In this document: positions 25,901-39,805 of the stretch, in pieces | How positions within the stretch are numbered: position 1 is the stretch's first letter | Layout: each line of letters begins with the position of its first letter | Assembly: GCA_965153285.1 (NCBI GenBank) | Contig: OZ229115.1 | From: Podarcis tiliguerta | Taxonomy: Eukaryota | Direction: 5' to 3' (one strand) | Length of the DNA stretch: 64,000 bases | Position numbers and translations under genes: made by a program | The notes under the pieces: generated by a model | Seen by the model: only the letters and a program-made list of their open reading frames with translations | Databases searched by the model: none | Told to the model about the DNA's origin: nothing

Positions 25901-28900
25901 TAAATGGTGAAAAATTGGGAAACCGCAAGGAGAACATGAGCACAATAATAGCCTCCCACTCCTGTTCCCCCAAAACTGGTACTTGGTGGGATACTACCTC
26001 AGATCCTGGAGGTTATAGCTATCATAACTAGTAGTAGCCACTGATAGTTGAACTAGAGGTTAAAGCTATTCAGAATCCATGGAAGACAAGGCTAAGAGCA
26101 AACTCAGTGAAAATGTATTAATTACCGGTATATATTTCAAAGGAATAAATGAAGTATGCTACCATCTGACTGAAGCCTTTTAAAATCCCAGCTATTAACT
26201 ATTTAGCACATTCATATAAAACTCCAGATGAATTAATAACTAATTCAACAATTAAGTAGCCACTTTAATTCCTAGCATAAAAAATAATTCTATCTGTCAC
26301 TCAATTGAAAAGTCCAAGGTTCTCAAGTAGTGTCTCAGTGAGATGGGGCGCCACCACTGCAGTCTCTCAAACACAGTGAGGCAGCATGGCAGAGCGGATA
26401 GAAGCACTGGGTTGGTGGCAGCAGGAACAAGCATACACATCTATACCTGCTGCTACCAATCCAGTGCTCTCCCACCCTTGCTGCTGCACTGACTTGCACA
26501 GTCCTGGGCCCAGCAAGCACATCATACAGCACAACTGGTTCCAGGTAAAAAGAAAAGAAAAAAAGGTCCCAAATTGTTGGAAATCGTGAAACAAAAGCTT
26601 AAAGTTTTCCAGATAAAATTAGTACTGTATTAGCGAGAGGCGAAAGCAAGTTTTAAATTTCCATCATCCAATGCTAATACTGAGTGGAAGCAAGATGGTT
26701 TGTAGAAATGATGGCAGGTGGATGGCAAACTCTCCACTGGAAGGAACATTTGAAAAGTAGGATCAAGAGATTGGAAGCCTTCCTTTCACCCCCAGTATAT
26801 TTACACTGCCCTCGCCCTGTTTGTCATGCTACCCCACCTCACCTGTTTAATTCTGTTGTATTTTGTTCTTTCAAATGCAGGTGTCCAGTTGCACAGCACC
26901 CCCTACAGACTTTTCTCCAGCCCAGCGCTCTTTCCACCCTGCCCCCACCAGCCTGTTCTTCTCTGTCCCTCCTTACACTGGCTTTGTTGACTCTCCTCCT
27001 GATCAGGAACAGCCTCTCCAATACAAACCCAATAAAAGGTGAGAAAGGAGGAAGACCACCCCTTTCTCCTTTCAGGACTAGGCTTTCCTTCTAATGAAGA
27101 TAAGTCAGCATAGAAATGCCTACTGTCTTCCTTTGTATACTTCTCTGTGTGTTTTGTGTATAAATGAAACAACTAAAAGATTATGCATCTCTAATCCACC
27201 CAAGTCTGTGATTTTCTCTGTATTTTTAATGAAGGATGTGGGGGCTGTTTTTAAGGGTGCATCTGCATGAGGTTTTGGTGGTGGCAGGATTGGATGTACT
27301 TACCCATCTGCACAGCAGAGGGTAGTTATAGTCTGCTCTGCCTGCAACTGACCATATAAACTGAAGCACATCAGTTAATATTTTCTTTCCACAGACTATA
27401 CCATACCACAAGGAGAGCTTTCTCCTGACCTTCCCATTGGCAGCAGAACACCAAAATGTGTTCAGAATAACTGTTTGTACATATGATCCCTAAAAATGTA
27501 ATTCTTCTGCCATGATTATCTAGAGTCTTCCTTGTTGTGTGTGTCTGTCCATGTCAATCACTACAAGATTAAAGACATTCACACATGCATGGCACATTAG
27601 TCTATCAATAGCTGTTAACTGGAACATCCTATATTCAGAGGCTGCCTCATTAGCAAATGCTGAGGACGCTGCCTTTGGCTTTGTTTATGCATTGGAGAGG
27701 ATATAACAGAGGCACCTTTTTAGTCGTAAAAAAATAATAATACAAAAATCCGCTGTAAAACCAAACTGCCTCTATTAAAGTAGGCTGATAGGATCGTGTT
27801 TCTAATTCTTTCTCTGAGTCAATTTCAGTGTGATTACTTTATATTGGAAGTCATGTACTTGAAGTGCTTGTGAAATGCAAAAAAACCCCACAAAAAAACC
27901 CCCCAAAAATATTGCTGAAACATTCACCCTCTTCCTTTAGAATTAGTGCCCCACCCACCCTTTTGAAGTGATCAATTCTGCAAGTCTTCCCTCTTTAATC
28001 TTTAAGGGATCACCACTGGATAATATTTTAGTGTATTATATTTTAGTGATGTCAAGGGATGCCAACAACAACAAGAAGAAGGTTCTCTCTGCGACTGGAA
28101 GAGTCATTCCCCTCTGAAAATTCTAAGCATCTTGGTAACATCTGCTAAATTAGCATTTTAAAGTGGTTCTGTCCCTACCTCCTAGAAACTGTTCTGGTCA
28201 GTACCCCAGAGCTTGCTAATGAAATACACATGATTCACCAGATCCTCCCAAGGGGAACCTTCATGCATATAAATTAAACTCAGCAAAAGTATTTTTCCTT
28301 CCTATGTCCTTTCTGATTTGTCACATTTTACTTACTCTTACCCTTATATAATCAACTACCTTTAACATTCCTTCTCTGCTCCCCTAACACCCAACTGGGT
28401 TCTTCAAGAAACCCCTTTCTTGCCTTTGTGCTGCAGTATGCTCACATGCATCAACCTTCCCCTCTTTTTTCATTTCCCCCCATCTCTCCCTGTTACCTTC
28501 CTGGCTGTGGCACTGGCAGCACCCAGAAACAGAATCCAAAGGCTTCTCCATACCTTCCTAGGTAAATACGAAGTATAGTTTGGATTTTCCTTTGCAGGGG
28601 TATATTTCTCTCCACATTCTGCTGTCGCAATAGAAATTGGCAATGAGACAATTGCTCTACTTGACTTTAATAGCCAGATATACAGTATATCAATATACAG
28701 TGGATCAATGGCTCTCTACTTTTCTTGTAACCCAGCTTTATTGCTTAATCTAGCAAGGTTCTGATTTGGTGGGGAGCTGCCATTTTGCTGTTCAAGAAGG
28801 GGAAAGGTGCTGCTTGCTGTTGAAGGACAGGGGCAACAGCTGAAGAGCAGTGGGTTAATAAGCCTCTGATTATTTCAGGAAATTTCAAGCAGTGCTCGAG

Positions 28901-37900: not shown

Positions 37901-39805
37901 TTTTTTTGATACTACTGTATACTACACTGAAATGTTTAAATATTTGATTGTTCTTGAATCTTCTTGCCACACCCTGAGAACCACTGCTTTACAGATTCAT
38001 TTGGGTGCAATGGGGAACATTTATGTGGTCTACTAACCCTGGAGTAGAAGGCTCCAGTATAGAGTAAGGAGGCACTTGGATATTCTGTAATTATATGAAA
38101 ACCTCAACAGCCTCAGGTATGACAGGCGCCTGCAATCTATGTAAGCCCTACTTTATCCCCAACGTTTCACCATTATTCTTGTTCAACAATCACACATATA
38201 AAAGAATGCACTTAATGCTATAGTTTGAAACTTCCAGATCCAGTTGGTGCCAGGTGCATCTGTGGTTGTGCGCATAGCAGATGGAAGATGGGATGAACTC
38301 AGATACACATCAGGGGTACGTATACTAGCTAAGTGAATCTAATCATCACAAACTTTTCATTCCACCCAGGAAAACAAAAGGATGAGCATACTAATTAACC
38401 ATCCACTGGAGAAAACCAAAAGCAATCTCACTTTCATGTTTACCATTTATCAATTTTCTGTGCAGCCAAATTGTAAAACAGAGCCAGGTGTCTTGTTTAT
38501 AGTGGATTGTCAGAAATCACATATACTAAAAAGGTTACCAGTAACTGTTCAGAGCACAAACTAACCACACATTAGATCATCACATCCTAGCTGACCTTGT
38601 CATTTGTTTCAGAGTATTGATCAATCTTATCTGCCAGAGACAACAGATCTGTACAATAAGGAACCCTCTGGAAGAAAAATTGCAGAAGTAATGTTGCAGG
38701 AGACTTCAAGAAAACAGGTAAAATTGGGCTATAGCCCAGGATGCTGAAATGAAGTTATATGGTTTTAGCAGAAATGTTATAAAGAACTAAGCAAGAACTG
38801 ATTGTTAATGGGCCAAAGTGGAAAATTTAAGGTTAGCTTGTGTTAAGATAAATCATAGAACAAAAAGTTGAGAAAGATGGAAAGGATTTGCTGAAATAGC
38901 TAATTGAACTAGAATACAAAAACGGGAGGTGTGGGGAGGTCGATGAAACAAGTAAATGAAAGGTAAAGATATGGAAATATTGGATGTGTTTTTAATTTTT
39001 TTTTTGTTATTCCTGTTGTTTTGTTGTATTGTTTTTATTTTTATTTTTGATGTATTGTAAGGTATTGTTCTGTTCTGTTAAACTTTTTACTGTTTCTTTT
39101 TTTCTGTAACTATTAAACTTCTAATAAATATTATTTTAAAAAATAAATTGGGCTATAGCCCTACTTATGAATGGAACAATTTGTCAACTAGCAACAGCCA
39201 CAGTGCAGCTCTCCTATGACATAAATGAAATTATAATTTAACTGCAAGGTTTGAAGTACACCCATTCTAGTGAGATCAGAACAAATGGAACTTGCTACAT
39301 ACATTTCCTGACCGAAAACGTTGCTCCACATTCTCCATACTGAAGAAATGAACCTATGCTGCCAATTCTTGTAGTAGACCAGCAAGAGGCCAGCAGCATA
39401 TAAGCGGCACACAAAGCACTACAAAACCATTCTACATTCTAAATCTTATATTAATAATCCAAAAATTGAGAGAACAAGGTACAAGATCTACTACAGAAGC
39501 CACAAACAGAAAACTAATTCAAATTGTGTCCAAAAGTAAGATTCAGGAGCCTGGCTAAAGGAACTTTAAAGACTGAATCTTCCTTTAGGACAAAATTTAA
39601 ATGAGTTTTCCTTTTGTGGCTTCTGTCTCAATTTTTGGATTATTAATATAAGATTTAGAACGTAGAATGGTTTGGTGGTGCTTTGTGTGCCGCTTATGTG
39701 CTGCTTACTTCTTACTGGTCCACATTCTCCATAAGCAGTGCAGGTTTAATTGTGACTTGCATGTTTTTCTTTCAGACAAAGTTGAAGGCATTGGAACAAA
39801 TTTAA
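16984..39805 (+). CDS. CCDC17: CCDC17-like protein, long form (about 1454 aa from 31 exons; about 1525 aa with two optional linker exons): N-terminal C2HC Zn finger, coiled coils, poly-Pro, four C2-like modules
   Basis: Frame-consistent GT-AG exons: 16984-17172, 17549-17686, 18595-18657, 19417-19534, 20320-20479, 20704-20823, 21266-21399, 22338-22472, 23364-23593, 23960-24045, 24337-24552, 25061-25283, 25619-25729, 26881-27038, [28047-28134, 28437-28561 optional], 28879-29020, 29202-29294, 30079-30286, 30394-30500, 30985-31125, 31971-32125, 32432-32552, 33346-33462, 33877-33974, 34067-34279, 34673-34844, 35356-35538, 36345-36596, 37287-37355, 38238-38315, 38613-38717, 39776-39805 (TKLKALEQI*). 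CCDC17-type motifs: [54 protein letters not shown]. Lies tail-to-tail with NASP as in mammals. Whether both halves are one transcript is inferred from splice phase only. Confidence 0.85.
18430..18560 (+). mobile_element. L2-type LINE 3' tail fragment
   Basis: gtaacccaccttggaaccttggggtgaagggtgggtaataa followed by (TAA)n; a similar reverse copy lies at about 6040-6110. Confidence 0.45.
21549..21587. repeat. (AC)n microsatellite
   Basis: About 19 uninterrupted AC units. Confidence 0.95.
29462..29681. mobile_element. Tc1/mariner (Tigger-like) MITE
   Basis: TIRs CAGTGGTATCTTGGGTTA / TAACCCGAGGTACCACTG flanked by TA on both sides; internal ttcaggtta repeats. Confidence 0.85.
31320..31860 (-). mobile_element. 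CR1 LINE ORF2 fragment (degenerate)
   Basis: Minus-strand translation [52 protein letters not shown] resembles the CR1 ORF2 C-terminal region. Confidence 0.8.
35269..35307. repeat. (TG)n microsatellite
   Basis: About 19 TG units, about 50 nt upstream of a CCDC17 acceptor. Confidence 0.95.
37747..37986. mobile_element. hAT-like MITE
   Basis: Termini CAGTGGTTCT ... AGAACCACTG; no clear TSD. Confidence 0.55.
38738..39144 (+). mobile_element. 5'-truncated retroelement (L1-like 3' UTR) insertion with a 17-bp TSD
   Basis: Direct repeat aaattgggctatagccc at 38721-38737 and 39145-39161; T-rich body, AATAAA at 39123-39128 and A-rich end. Confidence 0.8.
39377..39720. repeat. Local inverted duplication (arms about 120-140 bp, spacer about 80 nt)
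   Basis: 39377-39519 is the reverse complement of 39600-39720 apart from a few substitutions and an indel of about 22 nt. Confidence 0.9.

What the first reader, a model, noticed from the sequence alone, without database searches (positions are those of the whole stretch)
28879..39805. CCDC17 has an intact C-terminal extension of about 760 aa (17 exons) beyond the mammalian protein, forming a four-C2-module protein that looks ciliary
Seen: after exon 14 (phase 2) there are 17 further exons with canonical splice sites that join in frame without a stop up to TKLKALEQI* at 39805. The translation repeats one module four times: a hydrophobic start strand, then (G/A)W(A/T)-x-(L/I)-x-(I/L/V), then G-x-(W/H/Y)-x-(L/I)-x-(I/L), then a final (T/S/E)(L/V)xxR/xL strand. 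Module 1: [27 protein letters not shown]. Module 2: [31 protein letters not shown]. Module 3: [39 protein letters not shown]. Module 4: [32 protein letters not shown]. Known: human CCDC17 is about 620 aa and ends near the end of module 1; Ca2+-independent C2 tandems of this style occur in ciliary transition-zone proteins (NPHP1, NPHP4, B9, AHI1). Inference: this is the ancestral full-length, poorly characterised multi-C2 ciliary/flagellar protein, truncated in mammals and liable to be annotated as two genes.
Basis: partly seen in the sequence, partly recalled or inferred. Interest (0 to 1): 0.85.

Follow-up and report, generated by a model that had tools for sequence, protein, structure and literature searches.

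The report
Long four-C2 form of lizard CCDC17
The 17 extra exons are real and encode three more C2 domains of a roughly 1,450-residue CCDC17, an ancient form that public databases already annotate in sister species and that mammals have lost, but the splice joining the two halves was not seen in the RNA examined here.

Summary
**Observation: confirmed.**
- Seventeen + strand exons (28879-39805) all have AG/GT splice sites. They join in frame after exon 14 (phase 2) into 761 aa with one terminal stop.
- The translation is 98.7% identical to residues 693-1454 of Podarcis lilfordi CCDC17 isoform X1. The window therefore comes from a Podarcis lizard.

**Interpretation: mostly supported.**
- AlphaFold models of orthologues show four beta-sandwich domains. 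Modules 1, 2 and 4 match C2 domains of the Aida, PI3K and DOCK180 type (Z 13.3, 13.2 and 9.5). Module 3 has weaker support.
- Proteins of 1,300-1,570 aa with both halves occur from a choanoflagellate and a sponge to reptiles.
- A tree places the short marsupial and monotreme CCDC17 inside the clade of long amniote forms, so mammals lost the extension.
- Older RefSeq releases for the lacertids split the locus into two genes. Newer releases merge it.

**Caveats.**
- In contigs of four RNA-like runs, the exon 15-16 and 16-17 splices appear, but the exon 14-15 splice (27038 to 28879) does not. The contigs read through the exon 14 donor, and a donor at 28561 joins exon 15.
- The gene model is already in public databases. 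What seems unpublished is the four-C2 architecture and its loss in mammals.

Interest is modest.

The parts
16987..27038 (+). CCDC17 exons 1-14, the half shared with mammals: C2H2-like zinc finger, coiled coil, C2 module 1 (exons 11-13) and a proline-rich linker (exon 14). Boundaries of exons 2-4 and 9 are approximate.
   Evidence: tblastn of P. muralis, alligator, toad and gecko CCDC17 maps colinearly. My 14-exon model is open from the ATG at 16987 and ends in phase 2. The joints 24550>25059, 25280>25616 and 25729>26881 appear in RNA contigs.
26881..27038 (+). Exon 14. Its donor is AAG|GTGAGA. Reading through it gives AGG (R) and then TGA at 27040-27042.
   Evidence: Annotated short CCDC17 proteins of lizards, snakes, turtles, alligator, frogs, sawfish and bowfin end ...xR* at this point. 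RNA contigs of all four runs continue unspliced past 27038.
27039..28878 (+). Intron 14 (1.84 kb). It is covered by RNA contigs. It holds an internal donor, CCTTCCTAG|GTAAAT, at 28561/28562 that is seen spliced to exon 15. Related lacertids differ from the window by an insertion or deletion near 28200-28211.
   Evidence: X2 contig laid unbroken over 26881-28211; joint 28559>28877 with a cut offset of +2; contigs of X1, X2 and X10 leave the window sequence at 28195-28211. (sequence).
28879..31125 (+). Exons 15-19, encoding C2 module 2 (LGFILDRV ... AWAVLRL ... [10 protein letters not shown] ... TLRLHV).
   Evidence: splice sites, frame. Joints 29020>29202 and 29294>30079 appear in RNA contigs. 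The equivalent residues 281-476 of the Varanus model match the DOCK180 DHR-1 C2 domain: Z 13.2, rmsd 3.6 Å, 156 aligned residues.
31971..34279 (+). Exons 20-24, encoding C2 module 3 ([14 protein letters not shown] ... IGWAALNVF ... [10 protein letters not shown] ... TLLVRL) and the start of a helical segment.
   Evidence: The model has an eight-strand sandwich at 520-675 with pLDDT above 90. Pfam PI3K_C2 hits fall below threshold at this spot in 4 of 6 orthologues, and PF00792 is recorded for X. tropicalis and Choanoeca proteins, position not given. hhalign of module 2 against module 3 gives 87% probability, E 4e-6. This is the most conserved part: 52% identity between lizard and amphioxus.
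34673..38315 (+). Exons 25-29, encoding the helical linker and C2 module 4 (IKFALDRG ... AWTALHVF ... [10 protein letters not shown] ... SVVVRI).
   Evidence: In the coelacanth fragment model, residues 132-328 match Aida C2 (Z 9.5), DOCK180 (Z 9.4) and DOCK8 (Z 9.4). All 50 top rows of the Foldseek-independent search align to C2 domains or C2-containing chains.
38613..39805 (+). Exons 30 (38613-38717) and 31 (39776-39805), encoding the C-terminal tail. Stop codon at 39803-39805.
   Evidence: The ending ...ALEQI* matches the ends of the gecko (...LALEQI) and alligator (...LILDQI) proteins.
41000..58200 (-). NASP, convergent with CCDC17 as in mammals. This is the synteny anchor for orthology.
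   Evidence: Minus-strand open segments include a TPR exon at 45350-45087 and a large acidic exon at 51356-50172. CCDC17-NASP synteny across tetrapods is reported in PMC4082323.

Best explanation
Region 28879-39805 is the 3' half of the lizard (Podarcis) CCDC17 gene. The whole gene has 31 exons (16987-39805). It can encode a protein of about 1,450 aa built from a C2H2-like zinc finger, a coiled coil, C2 module 1, a proline-rich linker (exon 14), C2 modules 2 and 3, a helical segment, C2 module 4 and a short tail.

This long architecture is ancestral, dating from before the animals. Mammals lost exons 15-31, and so, independently, did most teleosts, which leaves the 600-670 aa protein known from human.

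In reptiles the locus also yields a short product that ends KR* when the exon 14 donor is not used.

Inferred, not shown: the protein is a scaffold of motile cilia. The coiled coil would pair two chains, and the four C2 domains of PI3K/DOCK/Aida type would bind membrane phosphoinositides or protein partners near the ciliary tip or base. No evidence for or against Ca2+ binding was obtained.
For: - Gene model: 17 canonical exons in frame and 14 upstream exons that are open from the ATG.
- Annotation: 97-98.7% identity over 761 aa to the annotated 1454-1455 aa CCDC17 of P. lilfordi and P. muralis, which use the same junction KPNKR|K.
- Expression: the extension exons are transcribed and spliced as modelled at two junctions, in two organisms.
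- Conservation: the extension is as well or better conserved than the N-terminal half.
- One ORF elsewhere: single ORFs holding both halves occur on transcript-sized contigs of oysters (1293-1335 aa on 4.4-7.0 kb). They are also found in transcriptome assemblies of a choanoflagellate (1317 aa) and a sponge (1523 aa).
- Split models look artefactual: the split lacertid 'LOC' models start at internal methionines in exon 16 or 17, inside module 2, which cuts off its conserved first strands.
- C2 folds.
- Orthology and loss: the tree puts mammals inside the long amniote clade (SH-aLRT 99) and clupeocephalan teleosts inside the long fish clade. NASP lies tail to tail with the gene.
- Cilia: ciliated-cell marker and airway-cilia proteome.
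Against: - No contig in four RNA-like runs shows the 27038>28879 junction. All run through the exon 14 donor. In run X2 one contig carries exons 11-13 spliced and then lies unbroken over 26881-28211. A second contig starting at 28210 carries a 28561>28879 splice. Contigs drop minor isoforms, so this is absence of evidence, but the dominant RNA in those samples would terminate the ORF at 27042.
- NCBI's pipeline calls two genes at this locus in many species of frogs, sharks, lizards and bowfin.
- Module 3 was not searched as a single domain.
- No Pfam C2 model reaches its threshold.
- Ciliary localisation is documented only for the short human protein.
- Function of the C2 domains is inferred from fold alone.
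Confidence: 0.75

Rival explanations
1. There are two transcription units. In lacertids, and perhaps most vertebrates, the locus makes a short CCDC17 (exons 1-14, terminated by read-through and polyadenylated within or after intron 14). A separate protein of about 700-800 aa with three C2 domains comes from a promoter inside intron 14, whose first exon ends at 28561.
For: - RNA contigs show donor read-through and a 28561>28879 splice but no 27038>28879 splice.
- RefSeq annotates separate 'uncharacterized LOC' proteins of 640-805 aa beside a short CCDC17 in many species. Some carry their own 25-55 aa Met-initiated N-termini ahead of module 2 (Elgaria, alligator, X. laevis, Pristis, Amia, Lithobates).
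- In the window an ATG in the frame of the 28561 donor could start such a protein.
Against: - In related organism B a 5-nt insertion behind 28464 lies between that ATG and the donor, so the candidate start frame is not conserved.
- The lacertid LOC models start at internal Met residues inside module 2.
- Those N-termini show no conserved sequence across species.
- Newer RefSeq releases merged the two models in P. muralis and Zootoca.
- The phase of exons 14 and 15 is compatible, and the junction position is conserved in tetrapod long models.
- Invertebrate, sponge and choanoflagellate transcripts carry both halves in one ORF.
Confidence: 0.15
2. The extension is a decaying remnant in lacertids. 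The downstream exons are still spliced but sit in the 3' UTR of a read-through mRNA and are no longer translated. This would be the first step toward the mammalian state.
For: Read-through transcripts dominate the assembled contigs. Short-only models exist for anoles, snakes and Pogona.
Against: A 761-codon frame with no stop and 17 intact splice-site pairs. There is 95-98.7% amino-acid identity among lacertids, 71-77% to other lizards and 52% in module 3 to amphioxus, at least as high as in the N-terminal half. An untranslated region would not keep this.
Confidence: 0.04
3. The modules are generic beta-sandwiches (Ig, ASH or MSP-like) and not C2 domains.
For: No Pfam C2 family passes its threshold. 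Profile matches of module 1 to the other modules are weak. Z scores of 9-10 for module 4 are only moderately above background.
Against: Every one of the top 50 rows in both Foldseek-independent searches is a C2 domain or a C2-containing chain. Near-full-domain alignments were obtained to Aida (135 of 152 residues, rmsd 2.5 Å) and DOCK180 (156 of 178).
Confidence: 0.03

Closest known systems
RefSeq/GenBank CCDC17 long models of lacertids (P. muralis XP_077784914.1, 1455 aa; Zootoca vivipara isoform X1, 1455 aa; P. lilfordi CAI5777312.1, 1454 aa)
   Same: Same gene, same exon 14 to 15 junction, same C-terminus. Identity over the extension is 95-98.7%.
   Different: Nothing of substance. The window is a congener or another individual. 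Earlier annotation releases split the locus into CCDC17 (581-694 aa) plus an uncharacterized LOC (689-715 aa).
Mammalian CCDC17
   Same: Orthologous N-terminal half: zinc finger, coiled coil, C2 module 1 and the ...VDPPP linker. It is the tail-to-tail neighbour of NASP. It is expressed in ciliated cells.
   Different: It ends within or at the exon-14 equivalent and lacks modules 2-4. No mammalian protein matched the extension. It sits on long branches in the tree.
C2 domains of the DOCK180/DOCK8 DHR-1, class I/II PI3K and Aida type
   Same: Eight-strand sandwich. Best structural matches: module 1 to Aida Z 13.3 and PI3K delta Z 12.7 (17% identity); module 2 to DOCK180 Z 13.2; module 4 to Aida Z 9.5 and DOCK180 Z 9.4.
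   Different: Sequence similarity is below Pfam thresholds. Module 4 carries helical insertions. Lipid binding was not tested.
Multi-C2 proteins (ferlins, extended synaptotagmins, copine BON1) and ciliary or centriolar C2 proteins (CEP120, RPGRIP1, central-pair chains 9nw3_3A and 9ijj_k)
   Same: Several C2 domains arrayed on one chain. Whole-model Foldseek hits to otoferlin and myoferlin at E 1e-11. CEP120 C2C Z 9.5, RPGRIP1 Z 8.4, 9nw3_3A Z 8.4-10.6.
   Different: No transmembrane anchor, SMP, FerA or other ferlin hallmark. No sequence homologue has a solved structure. The resemblance is at fold level only.
Vertebrate 'CCDC17-like' paralogue (641-672 aa in sharks, sturgeon, gar, bowfin, lungfish and salamanders)
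   Same: Same N-terminal architecture and the same two Pfam families, PF28454 and PF28455.
   Different: A separate clade (SH-aLRT 100) that is short in every species sampled. Mammalian CCDC17 does not belong to it.

Membership tests
CCDC17 orthologue group | Sequence identity along the whole length to annotated CCDC17 | tested here: met
   tblastn of the P. muralis 1455-aa protein maps colinearly from 16987 to 38726 at 61-100% identity per piece. The extension is 97-98.7% identical to Podarcis proteins.
CCDC17 orthologue group | Conserved synteny: NASP as the convergent neighbour | tested here: met
   NASP exons lie on the minus strand at 41-58 kb. The synteny is described in PMC4082323.
CCDC17 orthologue group | Placement with CCDC17 and not with CCDC17-like in a tree | tested here: met
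   The Podarcis long protein falls in the amniote CCDC17 clade (SH-aLRT 99). The '-like' clade is separate (100).
CCDC17 orthologue group | One mRNA carrying exons 1-31 in this lizard | tested here: inconclusive
   Joints exon 11 to 14, 15>16 and 16>17 were seen. Joint 14>15 was not seen. Read-through of the donor and an alternative donor at 28561 were seen. These are contigs only, from four runs of tissues I do not know.
C2 domain superfamily (PI3K_C2 / DOCK DHR-1 / Aida type) | Eight-stranded antiparallel beta-sandwich | tested here: met
   DSSP on the AlphaFold models shows 7-9 strands per module, with pLDDT mostly 85-97.
C2 domain superfamily (PI3K_C2 / DOCK DHR-1 / Aida type) | Significant structural match of each module to solved C2 domains | tested here: met
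   Module 1 Z 13.3, module 2 Z 13.2, module 4 Z 9.5, each covering most of the target domain. Module 3 appears only within tandem alignments (BON1 over 277-676) and was not searched alone.
C2 domain superfamily (PI3K_C2 / DOCK DHR-1 / Aida type) | Match to a curated Pfam C2 profile above its gathering score | tested here: not met
   Only PF00792 PI3K_C2 appeared, at 11.9-19.1 bits against a cut-off of 26.4, on module 3. PF00792 is, however, on record for two homologues in the precomputed tables.
C2 domain superfamily (PI3K_C2 / DOCK DHR-1 / Aida type) | Phospholipid, Ca2+ or partner binding | not testable with these tools
   Needs lipid-overlay or liposome assays and inspection of the binding loops in an experimental structure.
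   No such Pfam family was listed at E <= 1 for six orthologues. Structural neighbours are led by Aida, PI3K and DOCK. RPGRIP1 appears only at Z 8.4.
Ciliary proteins | Localisation to cilia, or expression restricted to ciliated cells | not tested
   Taken from papers on the human short protein: marker of ciliated cells (10.64898/2026.03.14.711768) and listed among ciliary tip proteins (PMC12700831). Nothing is known for the long form.

The most novel reading that the evidence does not exclude
Jawed vertebrates run CCDC17 as a two-output locus that is decided at exon 14. Skipping the donor gives a short protein of zinc finger, coiled coil and one C2 domain. Splicing gives the ancestral four-C2 protein. 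Intron 14 may be removed in two steps through the site CCTTCCTAG|GTAAAT at 28561/28562, which can act as a donor and, once joined to exon 15, recreates an acceptor. Mammals and most teleosts later fixed the short output and deleted the rest, so the human protein is only the N-terminal third of an ancient ciliary C2 scaffold.
Probability: 0.25. Interest if true: 0.55.

Novelty: already known. Interest (0 to 1): 0.35.

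Why it matters
CCDC17 is used as a marker of multiciliated cells and turns up in cilia proteomes, yet its function is unknown, and in the papers I found it is discussed only as the short human protein. 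This work indicates that the ancestral protein, conserved from choanoflagellates to reptiles, carries four C2 domains. Mammals keep only the first.

That has a practical consequence. Functional work in Xenopus, lizards, amphioxus or invertebrates would address a much larger protein than the human one. Loss-of-function phenotypes may therefore not transfer between these groups and mammals.

It also documents a recurring annotation error, in which one gene is split into CCDC17 plus an 'uncharacterized LOC'. The gene model itself is not new.

Tried and rejected
- **Pfam on ten single exons by reference:** nothing meaningful.
- **Pfam on six full-length orthologues:** only sub-threshold PI3K_C2, zf-C2H2 and coiled-coil noise. 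The two families on record, PF28454 and PF28455, are newer than the local Pfam copy. They appear only on models that include the N-terminal half.
- **Profile search of the PDB by sequence:** no homologue.
no joint there in the RNA contigs.
- **A candidate exon 28438-28561:** rejected as a coding insert. Its 124 nt would shift the frame into a stop in exon 15.
- **The in-frame stop in the exon 14 donor as a designed switch:** rejected. Any phase-2 intron with a GTRAGT donor reads xxG TRA, so the stop is automatic.
- **hhalign between modules:** real but modest similarity for modules 2, 3 and 4, and no significant similarity of module 1 to modules 2 or 3. 'One module repeated four times' therefore holds at fold level more than at sequence level.
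- **Alignment A2 (Heteronotia fragment first):** dropped as a fold target because that isoform lacks the exon-22 equivalent.
- **Papers:** none link CCDC17 with C2 domains.
- **The search of earlier findings by words:** nothing returned.
- **Joined translation:** not sent to any search or fold tool.
- **No sequence that I took for human** was fetched or compared.

Full report
**What is in the sequence**

I searched one exon by reference (35356-35538, 61 aa) against 1.84 billion representative proteins. It hit 30 clusters. Nine of them are proteins of 1,233-1,572 aa, with the exon matched about 190-260 residues before their C-termini. Their sources name them CCDC17 or 'uncharacterized' in a gecko, alligator, toads, a bonefish, amphioxus, a brachiopod, an oyster, an annelid, a nemertean and an acorn worm.

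I used the gecko, alligator and toad proteins as guides for tblastn and junction scoring. All 17 exons could be fixed:

- Every exon has a pyrimidine tract plus AG at its 5' side and GT at its 3' side.
- The phases chain correctly from the phase-2 end of exon 14 (27038).
- The product is 761 aa with one stop, at 39803-39805.

The last 10-codon exon (39776-39805) is confirmed by the shared ending ...L(E/D)QI* in gecko and alligator. Upstream, 14 exons starting at the ATG at 16987 are open and end in phase 2. Boundaries of exons 2-4 and 9 in my model are approximate.

The joined translation was made only inside scripts, for the frame check and for local comparison with proteins already fetched. 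It was not handed to any search or fold tool.

**Whose gene it is**

The 761 aa compare with lacertid proteins as follows:

| Species and model | Identity over the extension |
|---|---|
| Podarcis lilfordi CCDC17 isoform X1 (1454 aa) | 98.7% |
| P. raffonei 'LOC128415869' | 98.7% |
| P. muralis CCDC17 (XP_077784914.1, 1455 aa) | 97.0% |
| Zootoca vivipara isoform X1 (1455 aa) | 95.1% |

The window is therefore from a Podarcis lizard, and the long protein is already annotated with the same exon 14|15 junction (...KPNKR|K...). NASP lies on the minus strand from about 41 to 58 kb, tail to tail with this gene. That is the arrangement reported for tetrapods (PMC4082323).

For P. muralis, Zootoca, Lacerta agilis and P. 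raffonei there are paired records: a 'CCDC17' of 581-694 aa ending ...KPNKR, and an 'uncharacterized LOC' of 689-715 aa. The LOC proteins begin at internal methionines in exon 16 ([10 protein letters not shown]...) or exon 17 ([11 protein letters not shown]...). That is inside module 2 and downstream of its conserved first strands. Newer releases for P. muralis and Zootoca merge the pair. The same split occurs in many frogs, sharks and rays, bowfin, conger, lungfish, gharial and several lizards.

**Fold**

An AlphaFold2 model of the Varanus partial protein (1033 aa, 55-sequence alignment, mean pLDDT 78) shows the following:

- four beta-rich domains, at 30-190, 283-474, 520-675 and 791-976;
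- a disordered stretch at 214-279, which corresponds to exon 14;
- a helical segment at 720-765.

Foldseek against the PDB returns ferlins, DOCK5, PI3K, extended synaptotagmin, copine, Aida and some ciliary central-pair chains, at E from 1e-11 to 1e-5.

Domain-resolved alignments give these matches:

| Module | Best matches |
|---|---|
| 1 | Aida C2: Z 13.3, rmsd 2.5 Å, 135 of 152 residues; PI3K delta C2: Z 12.7, 17% identity |
| 2 | DOCK180 DHR-1 C2: Z 13.2, 156 of 178 residues |
| 4 | Aida Z 9.5, DOCK180 Z 9.4, DOCK8 Z 9.4 |

Module 4 was tested with a second model, of a 414-aa coelacanth fragment (mean pLDDT 82). It isolates module 4, and the rows of the Foldseek-independent search align to that module. 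In that search, all 50 listed rows are C2 domains or C2-containing chains.

Module 3 was not searched alone. Its support is:

- an eight-strand sandwich with pLDDT above 90;
- sub-threshold Pfam PI3K_C2 hits at the same place in four of six orthologues;
- PF00792 on record for two homologues, position not given;
- a profile-profile match to module 2 at 87% probability, E 4e-6;
- tandem alignments with copine BON1.

No Pfam C2 model passes its cut-off. No B9-type or other ciliary C2 family is hit. No PDB chain is a sequence homologue. So 'four C2 domains' stands. 'One module repeated four times' is true at fold level and only weakly so at sequence level.

**Age and loss**

Both halves occur in one predicted protein in these groups:

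- turtles, crocodilians and many lizards;
- frogs, salamanders and a caecilian;
- bichir, gar, eels and bonefish;
- amphioxus, an acorn worm, molluscs, annelids, a brachiopod and a nemertean;
- a flatworm (a shorter 1018-aa model carrying PF28455 plus the extension) and a sea anemone;
- a sponge (1523 aa, from a transcriptome) and a choanoflagellate (1317 aa, from a Trinity transcript).

Oyster proteins of 1293-1335 aa lie on Logan contigs of only 4.4-7.0 kb. Those contigs are transcripts, so both halves there sit in one ORF on one mRNA.

The extension is conserved at least as well as the N-terminal half. Between lizard and amphioxus the identities are: module 3, 52%; module 4, 45%; module 1, 44%; coiled-coil region, 34%.

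No mammal or bird appears among the matches to the extension. These lists are capped, so that is not proof. Marsupial CCDC17 (604-606 aa) ends ...DPPPAPE or ...DPPPASE, and monotreme CCDC17 ends ...FVDPPPARE...SLG. Both end within or at the exon-14 equivalent.

I built a maximum-likelihood tree on the 620 columns that at least 70% of the 38 proteins share, which excludes the extension columns. It shows:

- two vertebrate paralogues, and a 'CCDC17-like' clade that is short in every species sampled (SH-aLRT 100);
- mammals placed inside the amniote CCDC17 clade, next to the long lizard, turtle and alligator proteins (99);
- short clupeocephalan teleost proteins nested beside the long eel and bonefish proteins (100).

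The extension was therefore lost at least twice, once on the mammalian stem and once within teleosts. The mammalian sequences have an unusual composition and long branches, so their exact position deserves caution. Their exclusion from the '-like' clade is strongly supported.

**RNA evidence**

Sixteen runs held about 5-17% of the sampled words of 26800-30300. The highest shares match the exonic fraction of that stretch. They are labelled RNA only by guess, but the GT..AG joints show spliced RNA. I laid the contigs of four runs, from four related organisms, on 24300-30299.

Seen:
- joints 24550>25059, 25280>25616 and 25729>26881 (exons 11 to 14);
- joint 29020>29202 (exons 15 to 16, run X2);
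- joint 29294>30079 (exons 16 to 17, run X1).

Not seen:
- joint 27038>28879 (exons 14 to 15).

Instead, every run has a contig that passes straight through the exon 14 donor. In run X2 a single 3.7-kb contig carries exons 11-13 spliced and then lies unbroken over 26881-28211. A second contig runs from 28210 to 28559 and is spliced from there (donor CCTAG|GTAAAT at 28561/28562) to exon 15 and on to exon 16. Contigs of three organisms leave the window sequence at 28195-28211, which points to an insertion or deletion between the species.

Read-through of the donor gives AGG TGA, that is R followed by a stop. This is exactly how the annotated short proteins of lizards, snakes, turtles, alligator, frogs, sawfish and bowfin end. 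Skink-like transcript contigs of 2.6-2.7 kb encode such short forms. The stop itself is not special: any phase-2 intron with a GTRAGT donor reads xxG TRA.

**What the RNA does and does not show**

- It shows that the extension exons are expressed and spliced as modelled.
- It shows that a short, mammal-length product is a real and probably abundant output.
- It does not show the long mRNA in these samples. Contigs drop minor isoforms, and I do not know the tissues.

A separate C-terminal protein starting in the 28561 exon is possible, because an in-frame ATG lies upstream of the donor. However, a 5-nt insertion in organism B lies between that ATG and the donor. The lacertid LOC models also begin inside a folded domain.

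One reading is that intron 14 is removed in two steps. The site at 28561 reads YYYYYYAG|GTAAAT. Once joined to exon 15 it recreates a pyrimidine tract plus AG in front of exon 15. This is speculative, and I rate it low.

**Function**

This part is inference. Papers use CCDC17 with FOXJ1 as a marker of ciliated cells of the human oviduct. They also list it among ciliary tip proteins recovered with DNAAF9 from airway multiciliated cells, citing an airway-cilia proteome. That cited paper is not held in the library.

Among the hits, the protein occurs in lineages with motile cilia and was not seen in arthropods, nematodes, fungi or land plants. That is only absence from capped lists.

The most likely role is a coiled-coil dimer that presents up to eight C2 domains of PI3K/DOCK/Aida type to membrane lipids or protein partners in motile cilia.

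**Verdict**

The gene model, however, is ordinary and already public. What looks unreported is the domain architecture and its loss in mammals. The one point that would make it a single four-C2 protein in this lizard, the exon 14-15 splice, remains unverified by RNA.

Noticed in passing
window 14781-14896 (-): A full-length U5 spliceosomal snRNA gene (Rfam RF00020, 110 bits, E 6e-19) lies upstream of CCDC17. It was the only Rfam family that reached its gathering score in the window.
   Followed up: partly
window 29460-29685 (intron 16): A repeat of about 225 bp with inverted termini (ACAGTGGTA...TACCACTGT) and repeated GGTTAAGAAC units. In the RNA contigs its summed depth is 10^4-10^5, against 5-20 elsewhere, and there are many different flanks. 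This is the behaviour of a highly abundant squamate SINE-like element.
   Followed up: partly
window 28195-28211 (intron 14): Contigs of three related organisms diverge from the window at this point and carry 344-761 further letters that do not lie on the window. There is an insertion in the relatives or a deletion here.
   Followed up: no
window 28553-28567: CCTTCCTAG|GTAAAT looks like both an acceptor and a donor. It is used as a donor to exon 15 in run X2, and a contig of X1 ends there. It may be a nested or recursive splice site, or the end of an alternative first exon.
   Followed up: partly
window 50172-51356 (-) and 41.0-58.2 kb (-): NASP, with its large acidic exon that reads as Glu/Lys/Val-rich. 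This exon explains the strong GC and AT skew of the 50-52 kb bin. A G+C-rich probable promoter lies at 56-60 kb.
   Followed up: partly
window 42094-42567 (-): Open segments with a CWKCG...HMWWTC motif, typical of the C-terminal zinc knuckle of a LINE ORF2. This is a retroelement fragment in a NASP intron.
   Followed up: no
proteins P0226-P0244 and others; tree: Non-amniote vertebrates carry a second paralogue, 'CCDC17-like' (641-672 aa), that is short in every species sampled. Clupeocephalan teleost CCDC17 (about 660-674 aa; Alosa 895 aa keeps a part) lost the extension independently of mammals.
   Followed up: partly
window 35268-35310 and 21520-21560: (TG)n/(CA)n microsatellites in introns 25 and 7. 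They appear as runs of CVCV or HTHT in the translations.
   Followed up: no
No bird protein appeared in any of the three homology searches, for either half of the gene. The lists are capped, so loss of CCDC17 in birds is only a lead.
   Followed up: no
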